A stretch of DNA of 64,000 bases, from positions 124,001 through 188,000 of IMG/VR virus record IMGVR_UViG_3300017971_000001; one strand, 5' to 3'. Each line of letters starts with the position of its first letter. Positions within the stretch are counted from its first letter, which is position 1. This document shows, in pieces, positions 2,100 to 63,813 of the stretch. Made by a program: the position numbers and the translations under genes. A model generated the notes under the pieces. That model was not told the origin of the DNA. It saw only the letters and a list, made by a program, of their open reading frames with translations, and did not search any database.

Positions 2100-2429
2100 G
2101 CGGATTCCTCTCGCACGACCCCTCCTGCTAGAGAACGACGGGGCCGTATCCGTTCATGACTTGGCAGAGCGCGAAGAGGTCTTGCTGGAGTCCGCCGCAG
2201 CGAGCTCGAGCTTGATCCGGCCCCGCATTGAGCTCGCGCTGGAGCTCAGCAAGCCACTTTCGATTGTCCGTCACTTGGTAGAACGGCCCGCCGCGGAAGA
2301 AACCGCTGCCGATCTGCTGTGACTTAGACACTTTGAGAGGCCAGGGCGCTTCTGGCAAGTCCTCGGGACGAAGTGAAAGTGCGTAGGACGCTGCGAGGGC
2401 GACTTGAGGGTCGCCCCAAGCATTGAGGC

Positions 2430-2801
2430 TCATTCCTCGTCCTCGTCGTCGAGGTCTTCGTCGTCGTCGAGATCCTCGTCGTCGTCGAGGTCTTCGTCGT
2501 CGTCGAGGTCTTCGTCGTCGTCGAGGTCTTCGTCGTCGAGGCCTTCGTCGTCGAGGCCCTCGTCCGGCTCGAGTTCCTCGTCCGGCTCGAGTTCCTCGGG
2601 GAAGAGGTCGATCGTGTTCCTGACGAGATCGAAGTCCTCGTCCTCGTCTTCGTCGAGCTCGTCCAGGTCGAGGAGCTCGTCCACGGCCGTCATGACTCGG
2701 TCGAGCAGCATGCGCCCCTTGCGGTCCAAGGACGAGTCCTCGAGAAACGTCTTCACGTCACTCAGGAGCTCAAGGGTCTGGTGCTCTTCAGGGCTCAACA
2801 T
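2430..2801 (-). CDS. Highly acidic protein with DDDEDL tandem repeats
   Basis: C-terminal half almost entirely D/E/L, encoded by 15-18 bp tandem repeats. Confidence 0.75.
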   Translation of the reverse strand: MLSPEEHQTLELLSDVKTFLEDSSLDRKGRMLLDRVMTAVDELLDLDELDEDEDEDFDLVRNTIDLFPEELEPDEELEPDEGLDDEGLDDEDLDDDEDLDDDEDLDDDEDLDDDEDLDDEDEE

Positions 2802-3996: not shown

Positions 3997-4068
3997 AGCG
4001 GGCGGCGGGGATCGAACCCGCGACGAACGGGTTGGAAACCCGACGCTCTACCGCTGAGCTACGCCCGC
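3997..4068 (-). tRNA. tRNA-Gly (TCC)
   Basis: GCGGGCG/CGCCCGC acceptor, GCTC/GAGC D arm, loop TT-TCC-AA, TTCGATC T loop, U discriminator; CCA not encoded. Confidence 0.93.
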
Positions 4069-4148
4069 GTTTTCAGCTGCGACACCCCACCCTCCGTGCC
4101 GCCTCACCCCGTGTCGACGAGGTCCCTGTATCTACCACTCCTGGTCAA

Positions 4149-4557
4149 TGGAGGTGCCGGGAGTCGAACCCGGGTCCGCGATAGCCTCCGACCGCGCGCT
4201 CTACGTGTGTATCCGTCTGTTTGATTTCGCTGCCCGAGCTCGAAACGGCACGATCTCGGTCAGCTATCCGTCGATTTTGCTTCGGATCGAGCTAGGCGGA
4301 CTCGCTCGAATTCCTAGTCCGTCTTTTGGCCCCGGACCCCTTCCTCACGGACGGGATGTCAGGCCGGGGTGGTCGAGCTAAGCGACCAGGGCGGGCTTGG
4401 CGGCGCCGTCGATCCACGCGTGGATCTGGGCGTCGGTCAGGCCCTGCTCGTTGCTGTTGGCAAATGAGCTTTTTGATCGGCTTTTAACGCAGCCAACCGA
4501 TCAACTGCGACACGCACGCACGACTTCGTCTAGCACGTCGAAACCAAGGTCACCCCC
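4149..4557 (-). ncRNA. ssrA: tmRNA
   Basis: 5' GGGGGTGACCTTGGTTTCGAC and 3' CCGGGTTCGACTCCCGGCACCTCCA with G3:U pair; tag frame 4461-4378 reads ANSNEQGLTDAQIHAWIDGAAKPALVA*. Confidence 0.95.
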
Positions 4558-4604: not shown

Positions 4605-5834
4605 TCACAACCCTAGATTTGCCAGGATCATGTTCAGCGCCGACTCGTTTTCGGCGGTCCCGACGAACACGTCCGGCTCGTCCGGGTTGAATGTCGTTCC
4701 CAAGTGGACCGAGTACGGCTCGGCGCCCTGGACCCACTCCTCGGAATCAGCCTGGTTCAACGCCATGCACCGGACGATCACAGCTACCTCCTCGTCCGGC
4801 CAGAGCGGGTTCCCCGCTTCGTCGAGCTCGAAGTTGATCCCGCTCGGATCCCACTCGATCCTCAGGTTCGGAGGCCTCCCGACGGGAAGCACAGCCGTCG
4901 CCCAAGGATCAAGGTTGCTGCTTTCGTCTTCGAACCCGAACTCTCGCAGGAGGTGGGGGAACGGAACCAAGGGCTGGTAGTCGAACCCATGAAGCGGGAG
5001 CACGCTGTGGTCGCGGCCGGGATCGGCCGTTCTCATGCTCGAGTCGACGTAGTCGACCGCTCGACGCTGATCGCGCTCGATAGGGATCCAGGCCCGATAG
5101 AACAGCGGCTGCATGATCTCCTGATAGGCGTAATCCGGATCCTCGTCGACCGCGAACCCCTCCTCGGTTGCGAGGTAGTCAACGAACCAGTTCACCGGAA
5201 ACAGAGCGCGTGGGTAGTGCCCCAGGTCCATGTGCCAGGCCATGACGCCCAGTAGGCGAGGTCCAGGCTCGACGAGCGCTCGGGCCGCGGCGAGCAGGTA
5301 TTCGACCTGATCTTCACCCCGGATCATGCGATTGACCGCGGGTGGCATGCGAAACTCGCCCTCACCGTATAGGTAAACCTTTCCACCGCGGCCGCCGAAG
5401 TTCCACGGCCTCCTTTCCGCAGGAAGATCGAGCCAGGAAGCGTCGAGGGTAGCGAAGCAGGCGACCTGGTCCTCCCCTTCGACGTCCGACCAATCCACCG
5501 GTCGATCGCTCAGCAAATCAGGCCAGCCGATCAGCAGCAGCGCGTCACCAGGCAACAACCTGCCGAGAATGAAGTTCGGGGCCTTGGGGTAGGGAACCAG
5601 GAACCAGTCCGAACCGAGCTCCTGAGCGGCGAGCACGAAAGGTTCGAAGGCCTCGTCGACCTGGCCCGCGCGCAGGAGCGCGGTGGCGTAGGCGAGCACG
5701 TCTTCGCTCGAGCCGGTCTCCTCGGCGCGGCGCTCAAGGTCTCGGAGGCGTCCTGCTGGGTTTCGCTTCACCGAATCGTGTCCGCTGCGCTCACGCCAGC
5801 GCCGGCCCTCGTCGCTGTTGCGTCGGTATCTCAT
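4605..5834 (-). CDS. NP/DER-module protein
   Basis: ATG 5834 overlaps the upstream TGA; KRNPAGRLRDLERRAEETGSSEDVLAYATALLRAG near the N-terminus. Confidence 0.7.
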   Translation of the reverse strand: MRYRRNSDEGRRWRERSGHDSVKRNPAGRLRDLERRAEETGSSEDVLAYATALLRAGQVDEAFEPFVLAAQELGSDWFLVPYPKAPNFILGRLLPGDALLLIGWPDLLSDRPVDWSDVEGEDQVACFATLDASWLDLPAERRPWNFGGRGGKVYLYGEGEFRMPPAVNRMIRGEDQVEYLLAAARALVEPGPRLLGVMAWHMDLGHYPRALFPVNWFVDYLATEEGFAVDEDPDYAYQEIMQPLFYRAWIPIERDQRRAVDYVDSSMRTADPGRDHSVLPLHGFDYQPLVPFPHLLREFGFEDESSNLDPWATAVLPVGRPPNLRIEWDPSGINFELDEAGNPLWPDEEVAVIVRCMALNQADSEEWVQGAEPYSVHLGTTFNPDEPDVFVGTAENESALNMILANLGL

Positions 5835-38601: not shown

Positions 38602-39585
38602 ATGAACATGCCTTACCAGCAGCCCGGATACGGCGGGCAGCCCATGCAACCCGCTTACGGACAGCCCATGCAGCAGGGCTACGGACAGCCGCAGCCGGGC
38701 TACGGACAGCCGCAGCCGGGCTACGGACAGCCGCAGCCGGGCTACGGACAACCCATGCAGCCGGGTTACGCGCCCAACCCCTACGGACAGCCCTACCAGG
38801 CCGCTCCCCAGCAGCCCGAGCCGGACGTGAGCAACGCCACGTTCAACATTCCGGTGCCGGGTGAGAACCAGGACGACGTCGATCGCGCCTATTGGGAGAA
38901 CGTGCAGACGACCAACGAGGTCCCCTTCACGCCCGACATGGCCGGCCAGTTCTACAACGCCCAGATCCTGTTCGCCAAGGGCATGGTCGACACGGACAAG
39001 AACGGAGCTCAGCGGGGAACCAAGCTCTTCTTCATTATCGGGCTCAACACGCCCACCGGCCCCCGCAAGGTCCTCGACTCCCTGAACCCCGAGGTCTCCC
39101 ACCAGGCCAAGGTCTTCGCGGCCTTCTGCAAGGCCGCCGTGCCCGAGAAGACCGGCAAGGCGAGCGCCCTCGACTTCCGCGGCCGAAAGATCGTGGTCAA
39201 GGTCGACTACGGCAAGGGCAAGTACGCCGCGGACGGCGAGTCCCCCGACATTCGGATTCGGGGCTACTACCCCGCCGACTACAACCCGCAGGGCGCGCGC
39301 CCGCAGCAGCAGCACCAGCAGGCACGTCCGCAGCAGCCCCAGCAGCCTCAGCAGGGCTACGGCCAGCCGCCCCAGCAGCAGGGCTACCAGCAGCCGCAGC
39401 AGGGCTACCAGCAGCCGCAACAGGTCCAGCAGCAGCCGCAGCAGGGCTTCCAGGGCGGCATGCAGGGCCAGCCTCCCGTCCAGGCGCAGCAGGGCTACGG
39501 CCAGACCTACGGCCAGCCGCCCCAGCAGCAGCCTCAGGGCATGGCCGCGGCCATGGGCGTTCCTGATCAGGACGTTCCCTTCTAG
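38602..39585 (+). CDS. Phage SSB-like protein with Q/G/Y/P low-complexity arms
   Basis: Central beta-rich core; acidic-aromatic tail DQDVPF; lies between ERF and nuclease genes. Confidence 0.65.
   Translation: MNMPYQQPGYGGQPMQPAYGQPMQQGYGQPQPGYGQPQPGYGQPQPGYGQPMQPGYAPNPYGQPYQAAPQQPEPDVSNATFNIPVPGENQDDVDRAYWENVQTTNEVPFTPDMAGQFYNAQILFAKGMVDTDKNGAQRGTKLFFIIGLNTPTGPRKVLDSLNPEVSHQAKVFAAFCKAAVPEKTGKASALDFRGRKIVVKVDYGKGKYAADGESPDIRIRGYYPADYNPQGARPQQQHQQARPQQPQQPQQGYGQPPQQQGYQQPQQGYQQPQQVQQQPQQGFQGGMQGQPPVQAQQGYGQTYGQPPQQQPQGMAAAMGVPDQDVPF
38620..38800 (+). repeat. 21-bp coding tandem repeat (PGYGQPQ)
   Basis: GGCTACGGACAGCCGCAGCCG repeated. Confidence 0.85.
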
Positions 39586-43222: not shown

Positions 43223-46200
43223 ATGAAGCCAACCGTCGAGCAGCAAGCGGTCATTGAGCACGGCACGGGTCCGGCGCTCGTCCTCGCTGACGCCGGCAGC
43301 GGCAAGACGACCACGATCCTGCTGCGGATCAAGAACCTGATCCGGCGCGGCGTTCCTGCCAACCAGATCCTTATGATCACGTTCAGCCGCGCCGGCACCG
43401 AGGACATGATCCGCCGCGCCCGCGAATTGGGCGTCCCTCGAGGCGTGCAGTACCGAACGCTGCACAGCGTCGGTAAGGAAATGATCAAACGAGGATTCCC
43501 GCTGCAGGAGGAACGGACCTTCCGCTGGCCGCGCGAGGACTCGTCGGAAGACGAAGGCGGGAGCATGACTTTCTCGATCCCGACCGAGGGCGAGGAGGCG
43601 AAGAAGGAACCGGCCTTCGGTCAGCGGGTCGGGCGGAAGCAGTCGCTCGATATCGATATCGAAAAGCTCATGAAGGCCACGCTGCTCAACTACAAGGACG
43701 AGCTCGAAGCGAAAGGCCCCGTCAGCCGCGCGCACCTCGCCCCCAAGGTCAGTGAGGTCATGAAGCTGATCGACTTCAGCAAGTCCAATCTGATCTTTCC
43801 GGACCTGATCGACGAAACGACCGGCGAGCTCTTCTGCGAAGGGGCCTGGAGCAGCAGCGACGGAACGAAGTTCCCCTGTTTCATGGACTGGGCCTGGGAG
43901 AACCTGAGGATCTCTGAGGACGAGAACGAGCCCGGCCGGATCCCGGTCGTGATCGAGGCCGTGCAGCGCTGCTACATGAAGCTGCAAATGGCCTCGGCCT
44001 GCCCAGAGTATCACTCGTCGAACGAGTACTACGCTCTGCACGCCCACCGCTGGATCACGTTTTCCGACATGATCGCGCTGCCGGCGCAGGCGATCCTCAT
44101 GGGCCTTCCCTGGGTCTCGCCGTGGTGGGGCAGGTTCTCGTTCGTGATCGTGGACGAGGTCCAGGACAACAACCTTGGCCAATGGGCCATGGTCCGTCAC
44201 CTCGCCCGAGACAACAACCTCATGGCGGTCGGCGACGACTCGCAATCCATTTTCAGCTTCCGCGGCGCCCGGCCTGAACTCATGGGCTTCTTCAGGCAGG
44301 AGCTCATGAACTCGCAGGTCTACGGGCTCTCGGTGAACTTCAGGTGTCCGCACGAGGTCGTCAATCAGGCGAACAACCTGCTCAGCCACGCGCCGAACAA
44401 GCTAAAGGAAAAGCCCGCCCAGGCGCTCGAGTCTGCCTTGCCGGGACGGATCACGGTCACGTCTTACGCCGAACCCCTGAGGGAGGCGCGCGGCGTCGTC
44501 AAGAAGATCCAGGGCTATCAGGCGGCTGGGTTCCCCTCGCATGAGATCGCTGTGATCTACCGCACGCATGCCAGCGCTGGCGCGGTCGAGATCGAACTGA
44601 TCCGCAACCGAATCCCCTACCGCGTTCAGGGCTCTCCGTTCTTCAGCAAACCGATCGTCGCGGCCACGATCGGTTACCTCGGTCTCGCACTCGAACCCGG
44701 AGATCGGGAGTGGCTCAAGGCCTGCTACTGCAAGCCGCTGAGGAGTCTCAACCGAGCCTTCTTGAACACGTACGACAACTACGCTGCAGCGGTCAACGCC
44801 TTCGAGAACGACGAGGTCAAGCAGTGGCGCTGGAAGCGAGGTATTCCCAACCTTCGCAAGGCGGTCACCGAAACCCGGAAGGCGCTCAAGGAAAAGGGGG
44901 TGGGGGACGCGATCCGCCATGTGCTGTGGAAGCTTGAACTCGTCAAGTTCTTCGTCAATCGAGCCTCGGGCGACGGGAAGATCGAGATCGAGGACTACGC
45001 AAGAAACCTGGAGGACCTAGGGGATTGCTACGACAGCGCAGAGGATCTCCTGCGATACGTCCGGCTCATGCGCGACGACGATATCGCCGAGGCCGACCAC
45101 GACAACACCTACCTGAACAAGAAGTCCGCTCCGGGTCGCGTGGTGTTGAGCACCATTCACCGCTGCGTCCACCCGGACACTCTTATCGAAACAGGCGAGG
45201 GCCTGATTCCGATCAAGCTAGCCTCGAAATCCGGTCTTATCGGAACCCCGAAAGGGCCCCTCCGCTACAAAAACCTTGTTCGCAATCCGAGCAGAATTGG
45301 GATAAAGGTCACGACCGAAAGAGGGTACGAGCTCACCATGACGCCGGACCACGGAATCCAGGCATGGGGAGGAAATGGATACCGACGGCACCGCGCAGAC
45401 GAATTAAAGGAAGGCCAATTCGTTCGCTTGAAGCTGGGCGTGAATTGCCCTGCTGGAGAGGTTCCTAGCCTTCCAAGTCCAGGAGTCGGTGATATCCGTG
45501 AGCACGTCTGCAAAATTCCGCAGCGAATGAGCAGCGAGCTAGCTGAATTCCTGGGTTTGATAGTTGGCGACGGAACTTGCTACAAGCGAGGCGTCAGGCT
45601 GAAGAAGCGCCACGAAGAGGTTGTAAACCGCTTCTGCGCGCTAGGGAAATCGCTTTTTGGGCTAAACGCTATCCGAAAGAAAGAACAGGCGAAGAAGCCC
45701 GGCTACAACCTGACTGGAGAATTCGTCCACTACGCAGAAATCAACAGCACCAAGCTTTGCAGGTGGCTTGAAATCCTCGGAGGCACCTCCCCTCAGGAGA
45801 AGTCGATCCCCGAGTGCGTCCTGAGGAGCCCGGCAATCATTCAGGCCTCATTTCTCAGAGGACTGTTTGAAGACGGAACTGTAAATGTGAAAAAGGGGAA
45901 ACTCGATCATATCGACTGGTCCAACAAAAGCGAAGAAATGGCCAAGCAGGTTCAGGTCATGCTTCTGAGATTTGGGGTCGCCTGCAAGCGCAGGAGGGTC
46001 GAACACCAAGGAAGGAATAATACGCACATTTACATTTACGGAGAATTTGCCTCCAAGTTCGGAAGGTCGATCGGAATGATCAGCAAGGTCAAACAAGACC
46101 GCCTTTCGTGCGCCCCTGGCCGCCAAATGTATCCGGTCCCTATAGCCAAAAACGAACTTCGCTTCCTGAGGAACCAGGACAGAGCAAACGCCAGCCACAG

Positions 46201-46627
46201 AGGGAGGGTAAGCCGTTGGAAAGCAGCCCTCGTCCCCGATTTGATCGGGAAGCTGGGTTTCTTTCACGACCCGATTAAGAGTATTGAAATCGTAGAGTGC
46301 GAGTCCATGTGCGTCGAGGTTCCTGAAATGGGGAGGTTCCTTCAGAACGGATTCGACGGGCATAATTGCAAAGGCCTAGAGTACGGAACCGTTTTTTTGA
46401 TTCGGGCGAACGAGGGGGTCGTTCCGCACCGCCTGGCGGACCTGTCCGAAGAGCGCCGCCTGTTCTACGTCGCGGTCACCCGGACCAAATCGACCTGCGA
46501 GATCAGCTACGTGCAGGAGACCACCTTAGGCCCGGCGTTCCAGAGCCAGTTCATTCAGGAGCTCAAGCAGCGAAAGGAGGTGCGGATTGGACGAAAAGCT
46601 GACGAAAGCTTGGCGAGCTTGGCGTAG
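43223..46627 (+). CDS. uvrD: UvrD/PcrA-like SF1 helicase, intein-containing
   Basis: AGSGKTT, DEVQD, VGDDSQSIFSFRGA, NFRC, TIHR|CKGLE, EERRLFYVAVTR. Confidence 0.93.
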   Translation: MKPTVEQQAVIEHGTGPALVLADAGSGKTTTILLRIKNLIRRGVPANQILMITFSRAGTEDMIRRARELGVPRGVQYRTLHSVGKEMIKRGFPLQEERTFRWPREDSSEDEGGSMTFSIPTEGEEAKKEPAFGQRVGRKQSLDIDIEKLMKATLLNYKDELEAKGPVSRAHLAPKVSEVMKLIDFSKSNLIFPDLIDETTGELFCEGAWSSSDGTKFPCFMDWAWENLRISEDENEPGRIPVVIEAVQRCYMKLQMASACPEYHSSNEYYALHAHRWITFSDMIALPAQAILMGLPWVSPWWGRFSFVIVDEVQDNNLGQWAMVRHLARDNNLMAVGDDSQSIFSFRGARPELMGFFRQELMNSQVYGLSVNFRCPHEVVNQANNLLSHAPNKLKEKPAQALESALPGRITVTSYAEPLREARGVVKKIQGYQAAGFPSHEIAVIYRTHASAGAVEIELIRNRIPYRVQGSPFFSKPIVAATIGYLGLALEPGDREWLKACYCKPLRSLNRAFLNTYDNYAAAVNAFENDEVKQWRWKRGIPNLRKAVTETRKALKEKGVGDAIRHVLWKLELVKFFVNRASGDGKIEIEDYARNLEDLGDCYDSAEDLLRYVRLMRDDDIAEADHDNTYLNKKSAPGRVVLSTIHRCVHPDTLIETGEGLIPIKLASKSGLIGTPKGPLRYKNLVRNPSRIGIKVTTERGYELTMTPDHGIQAWGGNGYRRHRADELKEGQFVRLKLGVNCPAGEVPSLPSPGVGDIREHVCKIPQRMSSELAEFLGLIVGDGTCYKRGVRLKKRHEEVVNRFCALGKSLFGLNAIRKKEQAKKPGYNLTGEFVHYAEINSTKLCRWLEILGGTSPQEKSIPECVLRSPAIIQASFLRGLFEDGTVNVKKGKLDHIDWSNKSEEMAKQVQVMLLRFGVACKRRRVEHQGRNNTHIYIYGEFASKFGRSIGMISKVKQDRLSCAPGRQMYPVPIAKNELRFLRNQDRANASHRGRVSRWKAALVPDLIGKLGFFHDPIKSIEIVECESMCVEVPEMGRFLQNGFDGHNCKGLEYGTVFLIRANEGVVPHRLADLSEERRLFYVAVTRTKSTCEISYVQETTLGPAFQSQFIQELKQRKEVRIGRKADESLASLA
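45164..46366 (+). mobile_element. Intein with LAGLIDADG endonuclease (401 aa) in UvrD motif V
   Basis: R|CVHPDT...DGHN|C; TPDH; LGLIVGDG and FLRGLFEDG; visibly more AT-rich than flanks. Confidence 0.93.
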
Positions 46628-61086: not shown

Positions 61087-61161
61087 GCGCGGGTAGCTCA
61101 ACGAGGAGAGCGGCCAGTGAAATACCTGGAAGGGAGCGGCGTGCAAGTCCCGCCCCGCGCA
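61087..61161 (+). tRNA. Aberrant tRNA-like element
   Basis: GCGCGGG/CCCGCGC acceptor and GCTC/GAGC D arm; irregular anticodon loop; T loop GTGCAAG. Confidence 0.55.
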
Positions 61162-61165
61162 ACAC

Positions 61166-61232
61166 GGTCCGGTAGCTCAATGAAGAGCGTAGCCTTCGGG
61201 CTGAGGTGGTAGGTCACACCTGCCCCGGACCA
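61166..61232 (+). tRNA. tRNA-like element with anticodon loop replaced by a C(UUCG)G tetraloop
   Basis: GGTCCGG/CCGGACC acceptor; TAGCC-TTCG-GGCTG arm. Confidence 0.6.
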
Positions 61233-61240
61233 ACAACAAG

Positions 61241-61406
61241 AGCCTGTAGCTCAGAGGGCTCATGGGATACCCGCGACGGAGTGCGCACGAAGTCGTCGGT
61301 AGAGCATGGGGGCAAGGATCGTCGGTCGGGCTAGCTACCCAATCGTCTCTTTGCTGGAGCACCTGCCTAAAAAGCAGGAGGTCGCGAGGTTCGAATCCCG
61401 CCAAGC
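61241..61406 (+). tRNA. Interrupted or degenerate tRNA-like element
   Basis: TAGCTCAG 5' part ~100 nt from CCTGC-CTAAAAA-GCAGG-AGGTC..GTTCGAATC. Confidence 0.4.
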
Positions 61407-61480
61407 AGGAGTAGCTCAGCTACGAGAGAGCGTTCGGCCTCGAGTCGAAAGGTCGCGGCGTGCAATCCCCGCCTCCTGCA
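61405..61480 (+). tRNA. Aberrant tRNA-like element (nominal TCG, lacks U33)
   Basis: GCAGGAG/CTCCTGC acceptor; loop CCTCGAG; T loop GTGCAAT. Confidence 0.55.
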
Positions 61481-61613
61481 TTCTTCGGATCCAAGTTTCC
61501 ACGCCTCGGCGTGAGGAAAGACCGTAGCTCGTGCAAGGCGGGCTGGATCCATGTCGGTGGTCTTTGATAATCTTTCCCGCGAACTAGACCTCCGGTCTTT
61601 GAAATCTGATCAA

Positions 61614-61688
61614 CCGCCAGTAGCTCAGTTGGTAGAGCGTCGCGTCTAAGCAGCGCGAAGGTCAAGGGTTCGAGTCCCTTCCGGCGGA
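61614..61688 (+). tRNA. tRNA-like gene with enlarged anticodon loop, directly before the array
   Basis: Canonical D and T arms; TCGCG-TCTAAGCAG-CGCGA; one acceptor mismatch. Confidence 0.7.
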
Positions 61689-61692
61689 ACAC

Positions 61693-62690
61693 GAGCGAGT
61701 CCAGCAGACCGACCCGAACAGAGATCACGAGCGAGCCGACGAGCAAGACACGAACAGCGACTTCGAGCGAGCCGCTACCGACGACACGAGCATGGTATGC
61801 GAACGAGCAATGAGTTCGAATTCGATCGAAGGTGAAGAGCGAGTCGACTTTGCGGAATCGACCGTAGCAGATCAACGAGCCACCAGGTAAGAACCGACCC
61901 TAAGCAGCGAACGAGCCGCTAGAAGCGAATCGATCATGGCGAGCTAGCGAGCCATTGCCCCAGACACGAGCACCAAGGATAAGCGAGCTAAGGAACTCCG
62001 AGTCGAACATAGCCCATGAGCGAGCCCCTCATGCAGACACGATCAGAGATCGGGACCGAGCGCTCTGCGACGACACGATCAAAGCCCGCGACCGACCGAA
62101 TCTTGAGGTGAGAATCGATCCAGCATTGCGAGTGAGCCATGGACCGGGAAACGAGAAGCAAGCACAAGCGAGTCTCAGAACACGATCCGAACAACGACGA
62201 GGAACGAGCCTTAGCGCTCGACGCGAACGTCAAGAACAAGCGAGCCTCAGATCCACGACCTGACCGAAGAGGTAAAGCGAACCATGCGCCGGGAATCGAT
62301 CGCTACGAACAAGTGATCCGTAGCCTTCGAATCGAACGAAGAGAACGTGAGAGCCCCAGTTAGGGACCCGATCTAGACGAACGAGCGAGCCTTAATGTCC
62401 GACACGAGCAGCAGGAGCGGGAGCGAGTCCTGGTAGTCGAACCGACCAGACAGCCACGAACGAGCCTTTCACGTCGACGCGAGCATAGACGTGGATCGAG
62501 TCCTCAGCACAACGAATCGAGCATGGCGGAAGAGCGAGCCCTCGGCGTCGAAATGATTCATGAATCAAGAGCGAGTCGAACCCGATAACTCGAGCAGGGT
62601 TCCCGACCGAGCAGCCACTATCACCTAGACAAGATCGTGAAGAAGGAGCGAGCCTAAGCTCTGGACTTCAGCGTGACCGACAAGCGAGCC
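61693..62690 (+). repeat. Dual-repeat ~36-nt array, TIGR-like guide RNA array (27 units plus terminal repeat)
   Basis: Unit = GAGCGAGCC-N9-GA(C/A)NCGANC-N9 with nearly all spacers different. Confidence 0.85.
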
Positions 62691-62739: not shown

Positions 62740-63813
62740 ATGACCTACCGAATCAATGCCCGCGGTGACCGCGGGCGGCGCGAGCTCGAGCGGGCAGGCG
62801 ACGTCGAGGCTCAGGCTTCCGCGCTGAACGAGCGCCGTAGGACCGGAGAGATCAGCGAGGGTGCCCTCTCTGCGCTCGTAGACCTTGGCTACGAACCTGC
62901 GTCCCTGCTCGTTGGTCGCGAAGGTGGAACGGCGCCGATCTACCGCTGGTCGAGCTTGCGCTACCCCGACCGTGAGATCTTCGACGTCGAGCGCCGGATC
63001 CATGACTACGGGAAGAAGGTGATCGCTCACTTCGCCTTCGAGTCGATCGCAACGTTGATCGGCCTGGCGAATCAGCGCGGAATGCTGGTCCACGACAGCA
63101 ACCGAGACACCGAGCTCTTCAAGTCTGGCATGCGCGCGGTCCCCTTCGGTGAGATCGGTGTCGACGAGATCGTGGTCGAATACGGACTCGCGCCGCTGGC
63201 CTATATCGACCTCTGCGCCGAGGTGCTCGAGGACCCGTCCACCATGCTTCCCAACGCAGCTGAGATTCGAGAGATCGAGACCCAACTGCGCGATATGCAG
63301 GCCCAAGAGGAAGAGGGTCGCCAGGTCGACGACGAGATCAACGAGCTCGAGGGCCGCCTCTACTACGCCCAGAACCCAGGTCAGTACGCCCGGGACATGA
63401 GGGACGCGGCTCACGTTGCCTCTGAGCACGCTCGCGACGAAGCCGAAGGGGCCGCTTTTCATTTCTCGGATCAGAGCTTGTCGCTTCCGCTGCTCTGGTA
63501 CGCGCTGGCGGAGGCGTGTGCCTCGCTGATCGATATCTTCTTCGGGTTTCGAATGCTGGAAGGAGAGAGTTTCTCGTTCACCCAGTCCGGCACGACCTAC
63601 CTGCCCAACGAGGACCTCAGCCCACGCAGTCTGCTCGAGGTCATGGCGAACTGCGCCTACGGCTACGGCTACACGAACGACCCTACGAACTTTCACCGTC
63701 CGTTCGGGGTTGCGATCGGCGGTTTCGACAGCATGTCCAAGCACTTCTGGCCGAGATTCGTCTCGGACTTTTCTCCGGACATGATCGAAACCATTCTTGA
63801 GGAGGGGTTGTGA
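62740..63813 (+). CDS. DER-module protein
   Basis: INARGDRGRRELERAGDVEAQASALNERRRTGEISEGALSALVDLGYEPA. Confidence 0.7.
   Translation: MTYRINARGDRGRRELERAGDVEAQASALNERRRTGEISEGALSALVDLGYEPASLLVGREGGTAPIYRWSSLRYPDREIFDVERRIHDYGKKVIAHFAFESIATLIGLANQRGMLVHDSNRDTELFKSGMRAVPFGEIGVDEIVVEYGLAPLAYIDLCAEVLEDPSTMLPNAAEIREIETQLRDMQAQEEEGRQVDDEINELEGRLYYAQNPGQYARDMRDAAHVASEHARDEAEGAAFHFSDQSLSLPLLWYALAEACASLIDIFFGFRMLEGESFSFTQSGTTYLPNEDLSPRSLLEVMANCAYGYGYTNDPTNFHRPFGVAIGGFDSMSKHFWPRFVSDFSPDMIETILEEGL

What the first reader, a model, noticed from the sequence alone, without database searches (positions are those of the whole stretch)
61693..62690. 36-nt dual-repeat, dual-spacer array: TIGR-like guide RNA locus with no effector nearby
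Seen: 27 consecutive units, most exactly 36 nt, e.g. GAGCGAGTC CAGCAGACC GACCCGAAC AGAGATCAC / GAGCGAGCC GACGAGCAA GACACGAAC AGCGACTTC / GAGCGAGCC GCTACCGAC GACACGAGC ATGGTATGC. Two short degenerate repeats alternate with ~9-nt variable segments. A final repeat runs into a strong terminator. Repeats this short would be missed by CRISPR finders. Known: this geometry (edge and loop repeats, two 9-nt spacers, 36-nt units) is that of TIGR arrays, whose RNAs guide Nop-domain Tas proteins related to IS110 and box C/D proteins. Inference: an RNA-guided DNA-targeting system encoding ~27 guides. I find no Nop-domain gene in these 64 kb, so the effector is encoded elsewhere or is a new type. A few units have 10-14 nt spacers.
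Basis: partly seen in the sequence, partly recalled or inferred. Interest (0 to 1): 0.95.

Follow-up and report, generated by a model that had tools for sequence, protein, structure and literature searches.

The report
Orphan TIGR-type guide array in jumbo phage
A 1-kb array of 27 36-base units in a 245-kb uncultivated phage has the build and one repeat of known TIGR guide-RNA arrays, and its variable parts are conserved, but no partner (Tas) protein gene was found in the 86% of the genome that could be read.

Summary
Positions 61693-62690 (+) hold 27 units (19 of exactly 36 nt) plus a terminal repeat. Two 9-nt repeats alternate with about 9-nt unique segments. The array starts 4 nt after a tRNA-Leu gene and ends in a strong terminator. 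It is not coding and not self-structured.

Repeat 1 (GAGCGAGCC) is the edge repeat of TIGR arrays that sit beside real Tas genes. Repeat 2 (GA-C/A-N-CGA-N-C) and the missing CCA "box C" are not canonical.

A diverged sister phage has the same array at the same place. Shared units are 91-92% identical in the spacers, while synonymous sites of flanking genes are near saturation (45-61%). Whole units are gained, lost, duplicated or replaced. So the spacers are under selection.

No Tas or Nop-type gene appears in about 210 of about 245 kb (HMM and HH profiles, with positive controls). A confident model of one neighbouring gene product matches no Tas or Nop structure. No spacer pair matches the phage's own genome.

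Best reading: a functional TIGR-family array whose effector is remote, supplied in trans, or new. It is a new variant of a known kind. About 35 kb of the genome stay unread.

The parts
61093..61688 (+). Cluster of tRNA and tRNA-like genes directly upstream, ending with tRNA-Leu(AAG) at 61614-61688. It is the likely source of transcription, and its 3' processing would free the array's 5' end.
   Evidence: ARAGORN finds tRNA-Leu. Rfam tRNA hits lie at 61166-61232 (41 bits), 61405-61480 (39 bits), 61353-61401 (partial) and 61614-61688 (55 bits). The same order is seen in sister phage L029. Co-transcription is inferred.
61693..62681 (+). 27 dual-repeat, dual-spacer units. Each has edge repeat (G/A)A(G/A)CGAG(C/T)C, spacer A of about 9 nt, loop repeat GA(C/A)NCGANC, and spacer B of about 9 nt.
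   Evidence: The array is A-rich and T-poor (A 30.5%, T 12.2%, against 18.9% and 17.6% in the window). It has no stable fold (z = +1.26) and no complementarity between spacers A and B.
62682..62690 (+). Terminal edge repeat AAGCGAGCC. Its 3' part enters the terminator stem.
   Evidence: The same ending is seen in L029. It matches the TIGR array ending described in PMC12045711.
62686..62724 (+). Intrinsic terminator: a 13-pair bulged G+C stem followed by UUCUUUUUU.
   Evidence: -29.3 kcal/mol, z = -3.64. It is conserved in L029 with changes in the stem.

Best explanation
This is a TIGR-family dual-repeat guide-RNA array carried by an uncultivated jumbo phage of about 245 kb.

Shown:
- It has the architecture of dual-repeat TIGR arrays and their edge repeat.
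- It lies at the 3' end of a tRNA gene cluster and ends in a terminator.
- It is non-coding and unstructured.
- Its spacers are kept by purifying selection, while whole units are gained, lost, duplicated and replaced.
- No Tas-type gene lies within 61 kb upstream or 148 kb downstream.

Inferred:
- The array is transcribed with the tRNAs. tRNA 3' processing frees its 5' end, and it is cut within the edge repeats into dual-spacer RNAs of about 36 nt.
- Each RNA guides a dimeric Nop-domain (Tas-like) protein to DNA that reads spacer A followed by the reverse complement of spacer B.
- The protein comes from somewhere other than the array's neighbourhood: the unread 35 kb of the phage, or the host, or a co-resident element.
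- The targets lie outside the phage's own genome.
- The non-canonical loop repeat and box C suggest a partner whose RNA recognition differs from characterised TasA, TasH and TasR.
For: Architecture and statistics.

Edge repeat:
- It is identical to arrays next to real Tas genes. TasH loci found by protein similarity carry AAGCGAGCCA at a 36-nt period.
- L091 and L095 carry GAGCGAGCCA arrays with an adjacent Tas (E = 1.8e-26 and 6e-14).
- The published SpTIGR, TaTIGR and ParTIGR arrays also contain GCGAGCC.

Expression signals:
- The terminal repeat plus terminator matches the published description.
- The + strand is supported by tRNA orientation, terminator, base skew and repeat orientation.

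Selection, from sister phage L029/L030, which has the array at the same place:
- In 16 shared units, identity is 91% in repeat 1, 91% in spacer A, 83% in repeat 2 and 92% in spacer B.
- Four-fold synonymous sites of six flanking genes are 45-61% identical.
- Indels are whole units of 36, 37 and 72 nt. Five units are replaced. L029 has three extra 5' units and a pair of duplicated, diverging units.

RNA properties: unstructured, with no A/B pairing, as expected for dual-repeat rather than stem-loop arrays.
Against: - No Tas: TasH, TasH+ and TasA profile HMMs on six-frame translations give nothing better than E = 0.5 over window-equivalent positions 1-210,089.
- HH comparison of 158 ORFs gives at most 4.7% probability.
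- Pfam finds no PF02371 or Nop domain in about 40 window ORFs.
- Known TIGR arrays were all described next to tas genes.
- Box C (CCA) is absent. Position 10 is unconserved, and edge and loop share only GA...C, so the published edge/loop covariation rule is poorly met (rule).
- The repeats are more degenerate than in canonical arrays, and 8 of 27 units have odd lengths.
- No target was found in 210 kb of the phage, in 0.34 Mb of Tas-phage loci or in 2 Mb of other loci. Counts equal those of shuffled pairings.
- There are no expression data.
Confidence: 0.55

Rival explanations
1. The array has a TIGR origin but a new partner. It works with a phage-encoded effector that is not a recognisable Tas or Nop protein, or is one diverged beyond profile detection, and that reads the altered repeats (GA...CGA...C).
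For: - No Tas in 86% of the genome despite sensitive controls.
- Both repeats have lost CCA and share an internal CGA that canonical loop repeats lack.
- These altered positions (C23, G24, A25, C27) are the best conserved, which argues for specific recognition.
Against: - No candidate gene was identified.
- The three genes just downstream are fast-evolving paralogs (46-69% identity between the two phages).
- A confident model of one of them (pLDDT 85.6) matches no Tas or Nop structure in the PDB. Its best viral match is an Imm-5-like protein.
- 35 kb remain unread.
Confidence: 0.17
2. The array is a decoy or hijack RNA. The phage makes TIGR-like RNA without owning a Tas, either to load or to titrate the Tas proteins of its host or of competing phages. 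This would be analogous to phage-borne CRISPR repeat mimics and mini-arrays.
For: - The array is an orphan.
- The edge repeat is identical to that of TasH and TasA phage arrays.
- Tas proteins from the same metagenome (3300017971) are listed in Table S1 of PMC12045711.
- Conserved spacers would fit hijacking with fixed targets.
Against: - A pure decoy needs repeats, not conserved spacers.
- The missing CCA should weaken binding to canonical Tas.
- No spacer pair matches the 45 Tas-phage loci in hand.
- The host is unknown.
Confidence: 0.13
3. The array is a decaying relic of a TIGR array whose tas gene was lost, and it has no present function.
For: - The repeats are degenerate, several units have odd lengths, and box C is lost.
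- No Tas gene was found.
Against: - Spacers and repeats are about 90% conserved between phages whose neighbouring genes have saturated synonymous sites.
- The terminator and the position after tRNA-Leu are kept.
- Indels respect unit boundaries.
Confidence: 0.08
4. The array is not an RNA guide at all. It is either a translated 12-aa repeat or an array of DNA binding sites (iterons or a centromere).
For: 36 is a multiple of 3, and short repeats can be protein-binding sites.
Against: - All six frames have 5-12 stops, and unit lengths of 37-41 nt break the frame.
- Strong A-over-T strand skew, the tRNA-operon position and the terminator point to an RNA product.
- The 18-nt half-period is out of phase with the DNA helix (inference).
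Confidence: 0.03

Closest known systems
Dual-repeat TIGR arrays of TasH and TasA systems, for example SpTIGR of Salicola phage CGphi29 (PMC12045711) and the arrays in loci L091, L095, L068 and L047
   Same: - 36-nt unit with two alternating short repeats, two short unique spacers and no RNA self-structure.
- Edge repeat (G/A)AGCGAG(C/T)C, including the C/T variation.
- Long arrays of 27 to over 35 units.
- The last edge repeat runs into a terminator.
- Carried by phages.
   Different: - No adjacent tas gene here.
- Spacers are 9 nt rather than 8 nt, because the conserved 3' A of CCA is missing.
- The loop repeat is GA(C/A)NCGANC instead of (A/G)AGA-NAN-CCCA.
- Edge and loop share only GA...C.
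- The array is fused to a tRNA gene cluster.
- The repeats are more degenerate.
Archaeal box C/D sRNAs and plant dicistronic tRNA-snoRNA genes
   Same: - Tandem dual-guide RNAs used by Nop-domain proteins.
- The plant genes show a guide RNA released from a tRNA precursor by tRNA 3' processing (cited in PMC12045711).
   Different: - No RUGAUGA or CUGA boxes.
- Guides are 9 nt, not about 12 nt.
- No k-turn motif is evident.
- The phage carries a tmRNA gene, which points to a bacterial host.
Orphan CRISPR arrays and phage-borne CRISPR mini-arrays or repeat mimics
   Same: A guide array carried by a mobile element without its effector genes, possibly using or disturbing an effector supplied in trans.
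   Different: Repeats are 9 nt and of two kinds, each unit has two spacers, and there is no cas gene. No evidence for trans use was obtained here.

Membership tests
TIGR dual-repeat array | Two distinct alternating 8-12-nt repeats separated by spacers of about 9 nt, giving units of about 36 nt repeated many times | tested here: met
   27 units, 19 of exactly 36 nt. Repeats of 9 nt and spacers of about 9 nt. 13 motif matches against 0.07 expected.
TIGR dual-repeat array | Edge repeat of the canonical type: box D, a 4-nt interior with complementary ends (CGAG), then box C | tested here: inconclusive
   A2-G3, C4-G5-A6-G7 and C8-C9 match AG-CGAG-CC of the arrays beside TasH and TasA genes. The third base of box C (A of CCA) is not conserved: at position 10, A5 C4 G6 T4.
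TIGR dual-repeat array | Box D and box C motifs are the same, or covary, in edge and loop repeats, as needed for a symmetric protein dimer | tested here: not met
   Only G1/G19, A2/A20 and C9/C27 are shared. The edge has AG...CC(N) and the loop has A(C/A)...NC(A/G). Positions 21 and 26 show no Watson-Crick covariation (and unit list). The rule is quoted.
TIGR dual-repeat array | The array ends with an edge repeat followed by a rho-independent terminator | tested here: met
   Conserved in L029.
TIGR dual-repeat array | Unique spacers, no complementarity between spacers A and B, and no stable stem-loops | tested here: met
   54 unique spacers. A/B pairing is 4.2 against 4.2 for the null. Fold z = +1.26.
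TIGR-Tas system | A tas gene (Nop domain; Pfam PF02371 or NCBIfam NF052498) next to the array | tested here: not met
   No hit in window-equivalent positions 1-210,089 with three profile HMMs and HH profiles. Controls: 9MTY TasR at 1.6e-22, L091 and L095 Tas, and SpTasH against PF02371 at 2.5e-5 and NF052498 at 2.9e-34. About 35 kb (14%) are unread.
TIGR-Tas system | Array RNA is processed into tigRNAs of about 36 nt bound by Tas | not testable with these tools
   No expression data are available.
TIGR-Tas system | Spacer A and spacer B match opposite strands of adjacent DNA (one strand reads A then the reverse complement of B, with a gap of 0-2) | tested here: inconclusive
   Geometry was derived from the 8-nt 3' overhang rule. 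Hits with at most 2 mismatches equal the shuffled-pair null in 210 kb of the phage, 0.34 Mb of Tas-phage loci and 2 Mb of other loci. Host sequences are unknown.
Box C/D sRNA | RUGAUGA and CUGA boxes with guides of about 12 nt | tested here: not met
   The sequence shows no such boxes. No Rfam snoRNA or sRNA hit with E up to 1.
CRISPR array | One repeat of at least about 23 nt alternating with one spacer | tested here: not met
   Two 9-nt repeats per 36-nt unit.

The most novel reading that the evidence does not exclude
A TIGR-type guide array that functions without any Tas gene in its own genome. It would either load a Tas protein made by the host or by a competing phage (guide-RNA hijacking), or serve a new, non-Nop effector that reads the altered GA...CGA...C repeats. 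In both cases the array is expressed as the tail of a tRNA operon.
Probability: 0.3. Interest if true: 0.85.

Novelty: new variant of a known kind. Interest (0 to 1): 0.62.

Why it matters
- TIGR arrays have so far been catalogued only around tas genes. TIGRFinder was run on 20,096 tas loci.
- A selected, long array with no tas gene for at least 60-150 kb would show that arrays and effectors can be uncoupled. The closest parallel is orphan or hijacking CRISPR arrays.
- Tas-independent searches for arrays are therefore needed.
- The altered box C and loop repeat give a natural variant for testing what Tas proteins really need to recognise.
- The tRNA fusion suggests a simple way of expressing and releasing guide arrays.
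- Conserved spacers imply fixed targets worth finding, since no natural TIGR targets are known (PMC12045711 discussion).

Tried and rejected
- Coding repeat: rejected, with 5-12 stops in every frame.
- Stem-loop TIGR architecture or a structured RNA: rejected.
- Rfam: only tRNAs, nothing in the array.
- Downstream paralogs (357, 279 and 263 aa) as effector:
  - No Pfam, NCBIfam or PDB sequence hit.
  - Only four full-length relatives among 1.8 billion representatives. The rest share a 55-aa N-terminal module.
  - The 357-aa model was poor (pLDDT 50), so its fold search is meaningless.
  - The 263-aa model is good (pLDDT 85.6) and does not match Tas or Nop structures.
- Other arrays of this subtype:
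  - The exact and the relaxed repeat patterns found only this phage in IMG/VR, plus two canonical arrays, L091 and L095.
- Finding the phage's Tas by protein search:
  - The search for related loci with a TasH alignment returned 44 other phages, not this one.
  - The top 120 hits of each of two Tas searches contain no protein from a 245-kb contig.
- GenBank phages: no DNA or protein relative.
- Self-targeting and targeting of Tas phages: at chance level.
- A 14-nt identity between unit 21 and position 4974 is within chance expectation.

Full report
**1. What is there**

- Positions 61693-62690 on the + strand hold 27 head-to-tail units and a final repeat.
- Unit lengths are 36 nt (19 units), 37 (4), 38 (2), 40 (1) and 41 (1).
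- Each unit has four parts:
  - a first repeat, (G/A)A(G/A)CGAG(C/T)C;
  - about 9 variable bases;
  - a second repeat, GA(C/A)NCGANC;
  - about 9 more variable bases.
- In the 19 exact units the informative positions are A2, C4-C9, G19, A20, C23-A25 and C27. Positions 10-18 and 29-34 are essentially random. Weak signals appear at 28 (A/G), 31 (purine), 35 (A) and 36 (C).
- The pattern RCGAGYC-N9-GANNCGANC occurs 13 times in the window, all inside the array and all on +. Shuffles give 0.07.
- Tandem Repeats Finder reports only 2.2 copies, so ordinary repeat finders would miss the array.
- All six frames carry 5-12 stops. The array is not a translated repeat.
- The + strand is A-rich and T-poor: A 30.5% and T 12.2%, against 18.9% and 17.6% in the window.
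- The RNA folds no better than shuffles (z = +1.26).
- Spacers A and B of a unit are not complementary (4.2 pairs against 4.2 for mismatched pairs), and all 54 spacers are unique.

**2. Setting**

- The array begins 4 nt after tRNA-Leu(AAG) at 61614-61688.
- With laxer filters, Rfam finds more tRNAs just upstream: 61166-61232, 61405-61480 and a partial one at 61353-61401. The array is therefore the tail of a tRNA gene cluster on the same strand.
- The last repeat runs into a bulged G+C hairpin followed by UUCUUUUUU (-29.3 kcal/mol, z = -3.6).
- Upstream lie a PTH2 peptidyl-tRNA hydrolase, a phosphatase-like protein, an RNase T-like exonuclease and a primase-like protein of 1100 aa.
- The rest of the window holds phage replication and recombination genes and DNA methylases, plus a tmRNA gene.
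- The window is part of IMGVR_UViG_3300017971_000001 (245,276 bp). Contigs of the same phage, 245.0-245.3 kb long, occur in several assemblies.
- It has no relative among GenBank phages.

**3. Comparison with known TIGR arrays**

PMC12045711 defines TIGR arrays as follows:
- two alternating 8-12-nt repeats (edge and loop) with 9-nt spacers;
- units usually of 36 nt;
- box D at the 5' end and box C (CCA) at the 3' end of both repeats, covarying between edge and loop.

I fetched real examples for comparison:
- The TasH gene of Salicola phage CGphi29 (L031:14395-15321) scores against PF02371 (2.5e-5) and against NCBIfam NF052498 'TIGR-Tas system RNA-guided endonuclease' (2.9e-34).
- 44 IMG/VR loci encode TasH relatives. 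Twenty of them carry GCGAGCC at a 36-nt period on the strand of the gene.
- These arrays read AAGCGAG(C/T)CA - 8 nt - AAGA-NAN-CCCA - 8 nt.
- Two further arrays, L091 and L095, read GAGCGAGCCA - 8 nt - GAGA-NAN-CCCA - 8-9 nt. They have more than 35 units, and each has a Tas gene beside it.

Against these, the window's array shows:
- The first repeat is the canonical edge repeat, down to the C/T alternative at its eighth base.
- The A of CCA is not conserved.
- The second repeat is not a canonical loop repeat. It carries an internal CGA, as the edge repeat does, and ends in NC(A/G).
- Edge and loop share only GA at the 5' end and C at the 3' end.

By architecture and by edge-repeat homology the array belongs with TIGR arrays. 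By the box C and covariation rule it does not fit them.

**4. Evidence for function**

- A diverged sister phage was found through the protein downstream of the array (69% identical). It is represented by L029 and L030.
- It has the same gene order and an array of about 26 units in the same place, after tRNA-Leu and before the terminator.
- In six flanking genes, four-fold synonymous sites are only 45-61% identical, which is close to saturation.
- In the 16 units the two arrays share, identity is 91% in repeat 1, 91% in spacer A, 83% in repeat 2 and 92% in spacer B.
- The variable segments are thus as constrained as the repeats. The least constrained part is the loop repeat, which in the TasR structure makes few base-specific contacts.
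- Differences between the two arrays are mostly whole units:
  - deletions or insertions of 36, 37 and 72 nt;
  - five units with replaced spacers;
  - three extra units at the 5' end of L029;
  - two adjacent L029 units whose spacers are diverging duplicates.
- This is how a modular array of independent, sequence-specific units should evolve. It is not how a neutral relic should.

**5. The effector**

Nothing Tas-like was found.
- About 40 window ORFs were scanned with Pfam. None hit PF02371 or a Nop domain.
- I built profile HMMs from 120 TasH relatives, from those plus the L091 and L095 Tas proteins, and from 120 TasA-type relatives of the L095 protein.
- Controls show that these profiles cross clades:
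  - the TasH profile finds archaeal TasR (PDB 9MTY) at 1.6e-22;
  - it finds the L091 and L095 proteins at 1.8e-26 and 6e-14;
  - the TasA profile finds TasH at 1e-19.
- I then walked along the phage genome piece by piece, using 11 successful contig look-ups and 5 viral-contig scans.
- The pieces overlap and chain to window-equivalent positions 1-210,089 (extended).
- Six-frame translations of every piece give no hit better than E = 0.5.
- HH comparison of 158 ORFs of 150-750 aa with the TasH and TasA profiles gives at most 4.7% probability, against 96.5% for the cross-clade control.
- There is no second array either.

The three genes right after the terminator are fast-evolving paralogs of one another.
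- Homology is confined to these phages, apart from a 55-aa N-terminal module.
- A confident model of the 263-aa paralog (pLDDT 85.6, pTM 0.84) has no significant match in the PDB, which contains TasR, TasH and Nop5-type structures.
- Its best match among viral models is an Imm-5-like protein (probability 0.99, E = 0.22).

**6. Targets**

- The published cleavage rule (8-nt 3' overhangs, cuts set by the fifth spacer base) implies that a target strand reads spacer A followed by the reverse complement of spacer B. Gaps of 0-2 bp are tolerated.
- With at most 2 mismatches, the 27 pairs hit the phage's own 210 kb, 0.34 Mb of Tas-phage loci and 2 Mb of unrelated loci no more often than shuffled A/B pairings do.
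- The array therefore does not regulate or target its own genome, as far as that genome was read. The targets are unknown.

**7. Verdict**

This is a TIGR-family array by descent and build, and its spacers are under selection.
- It lacks an adjacent effector, and probably a phage-encoded one, and it departs from the canonical box C and loop repeat.
- My estimates for the competing readings:

| Reading | Estimate |
|---|---|
| Functional guide array served by a Tas-type protein encoded elsewhere | 0.55 |
| New or unrecognisable effector | 0.17 |
| Decoy or hijack RNA | 0.13 |
| Relic | 0.08 |
| Non-RNA readings | 0.03 |

- Novelty: a new variant of a known kind.
- The main weaknesses are the unread 35 kb, the unknown host, and the absence of expression data.

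Noticed in passing
window 61093-61613 (+): There are several tRNA-like genes that ARAGORN misses. Rfam, with lax filters only, finds tRNAs at 61166-61232 and 61405-61480, and a 3' half at 61353-61401 whose 5' half seems to lie near 61240, about 100 nt away (an interrupted tRNA?). Their T-loops read GTGCAAGTCC or GTGCAATCC rather than TTCGAATCC.
   Followed up: partly
window 61481-61613 (+); L029 8718-8853: A stretch between two tRNAs is about 88% conserved between the two phages, although nearby synonymous sites are saturated. It can form hairpins, one with a compensatory A-U to G-C change. This may be an unknown small RNA. The fold z-score alone is unremarkable (-0.9).
   Followed up: partly
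window 3997-4557 (-): A phage-borne tmRNA gene (Rfam 149 bits) with the unusual predicted tag ADQKAHLPTATSRA lies next to a tRNA-Gly(UCC). It points to a bacterial host.
   Followed up: no
window 62740-63813 (+) and L007 6762-7601, 7601-8392: Three tandem paralogs follow the array. They are fast-evolving (46-69% identity between the two phages) and share a roughly 55-aa N-terminal module with many otherwise unrelated proteins. The 263-aa member folds with confidence into an all-helical protein whose best viral match is an Imm-5-like protein.
   Followed up: yes
window 43223-46627 (+): A UvrD-type helicase gene is interrupted by an intein carrying a LAGLIDADG endonuclease domain.
   Followed up: no
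L029 9138-9209: Two adjacent array units have near-duplicate spacers (TACCGCCCC and CACCGCCCC; GTAGTGTTT and GTAGCACTC). This suggests that new units arise by duplication and divergence rather than by acquisition.
   Followed up: partly
L029 8926-8993: The sister phage has an extra hairpin of about 60 nt (GAGAGCG...CGCTCTC) between tRNA-Leu and its array. The window lacks it.
   Followed up: no
window 2419-2700 (-) and 38640-39540 (+): Two genes contain long low-complexity coding repeats: an acidic Asp/Glu-rich run and Gln/Pro/Gly/Tyr-rich heptad-like repeats.
   Followed up: no
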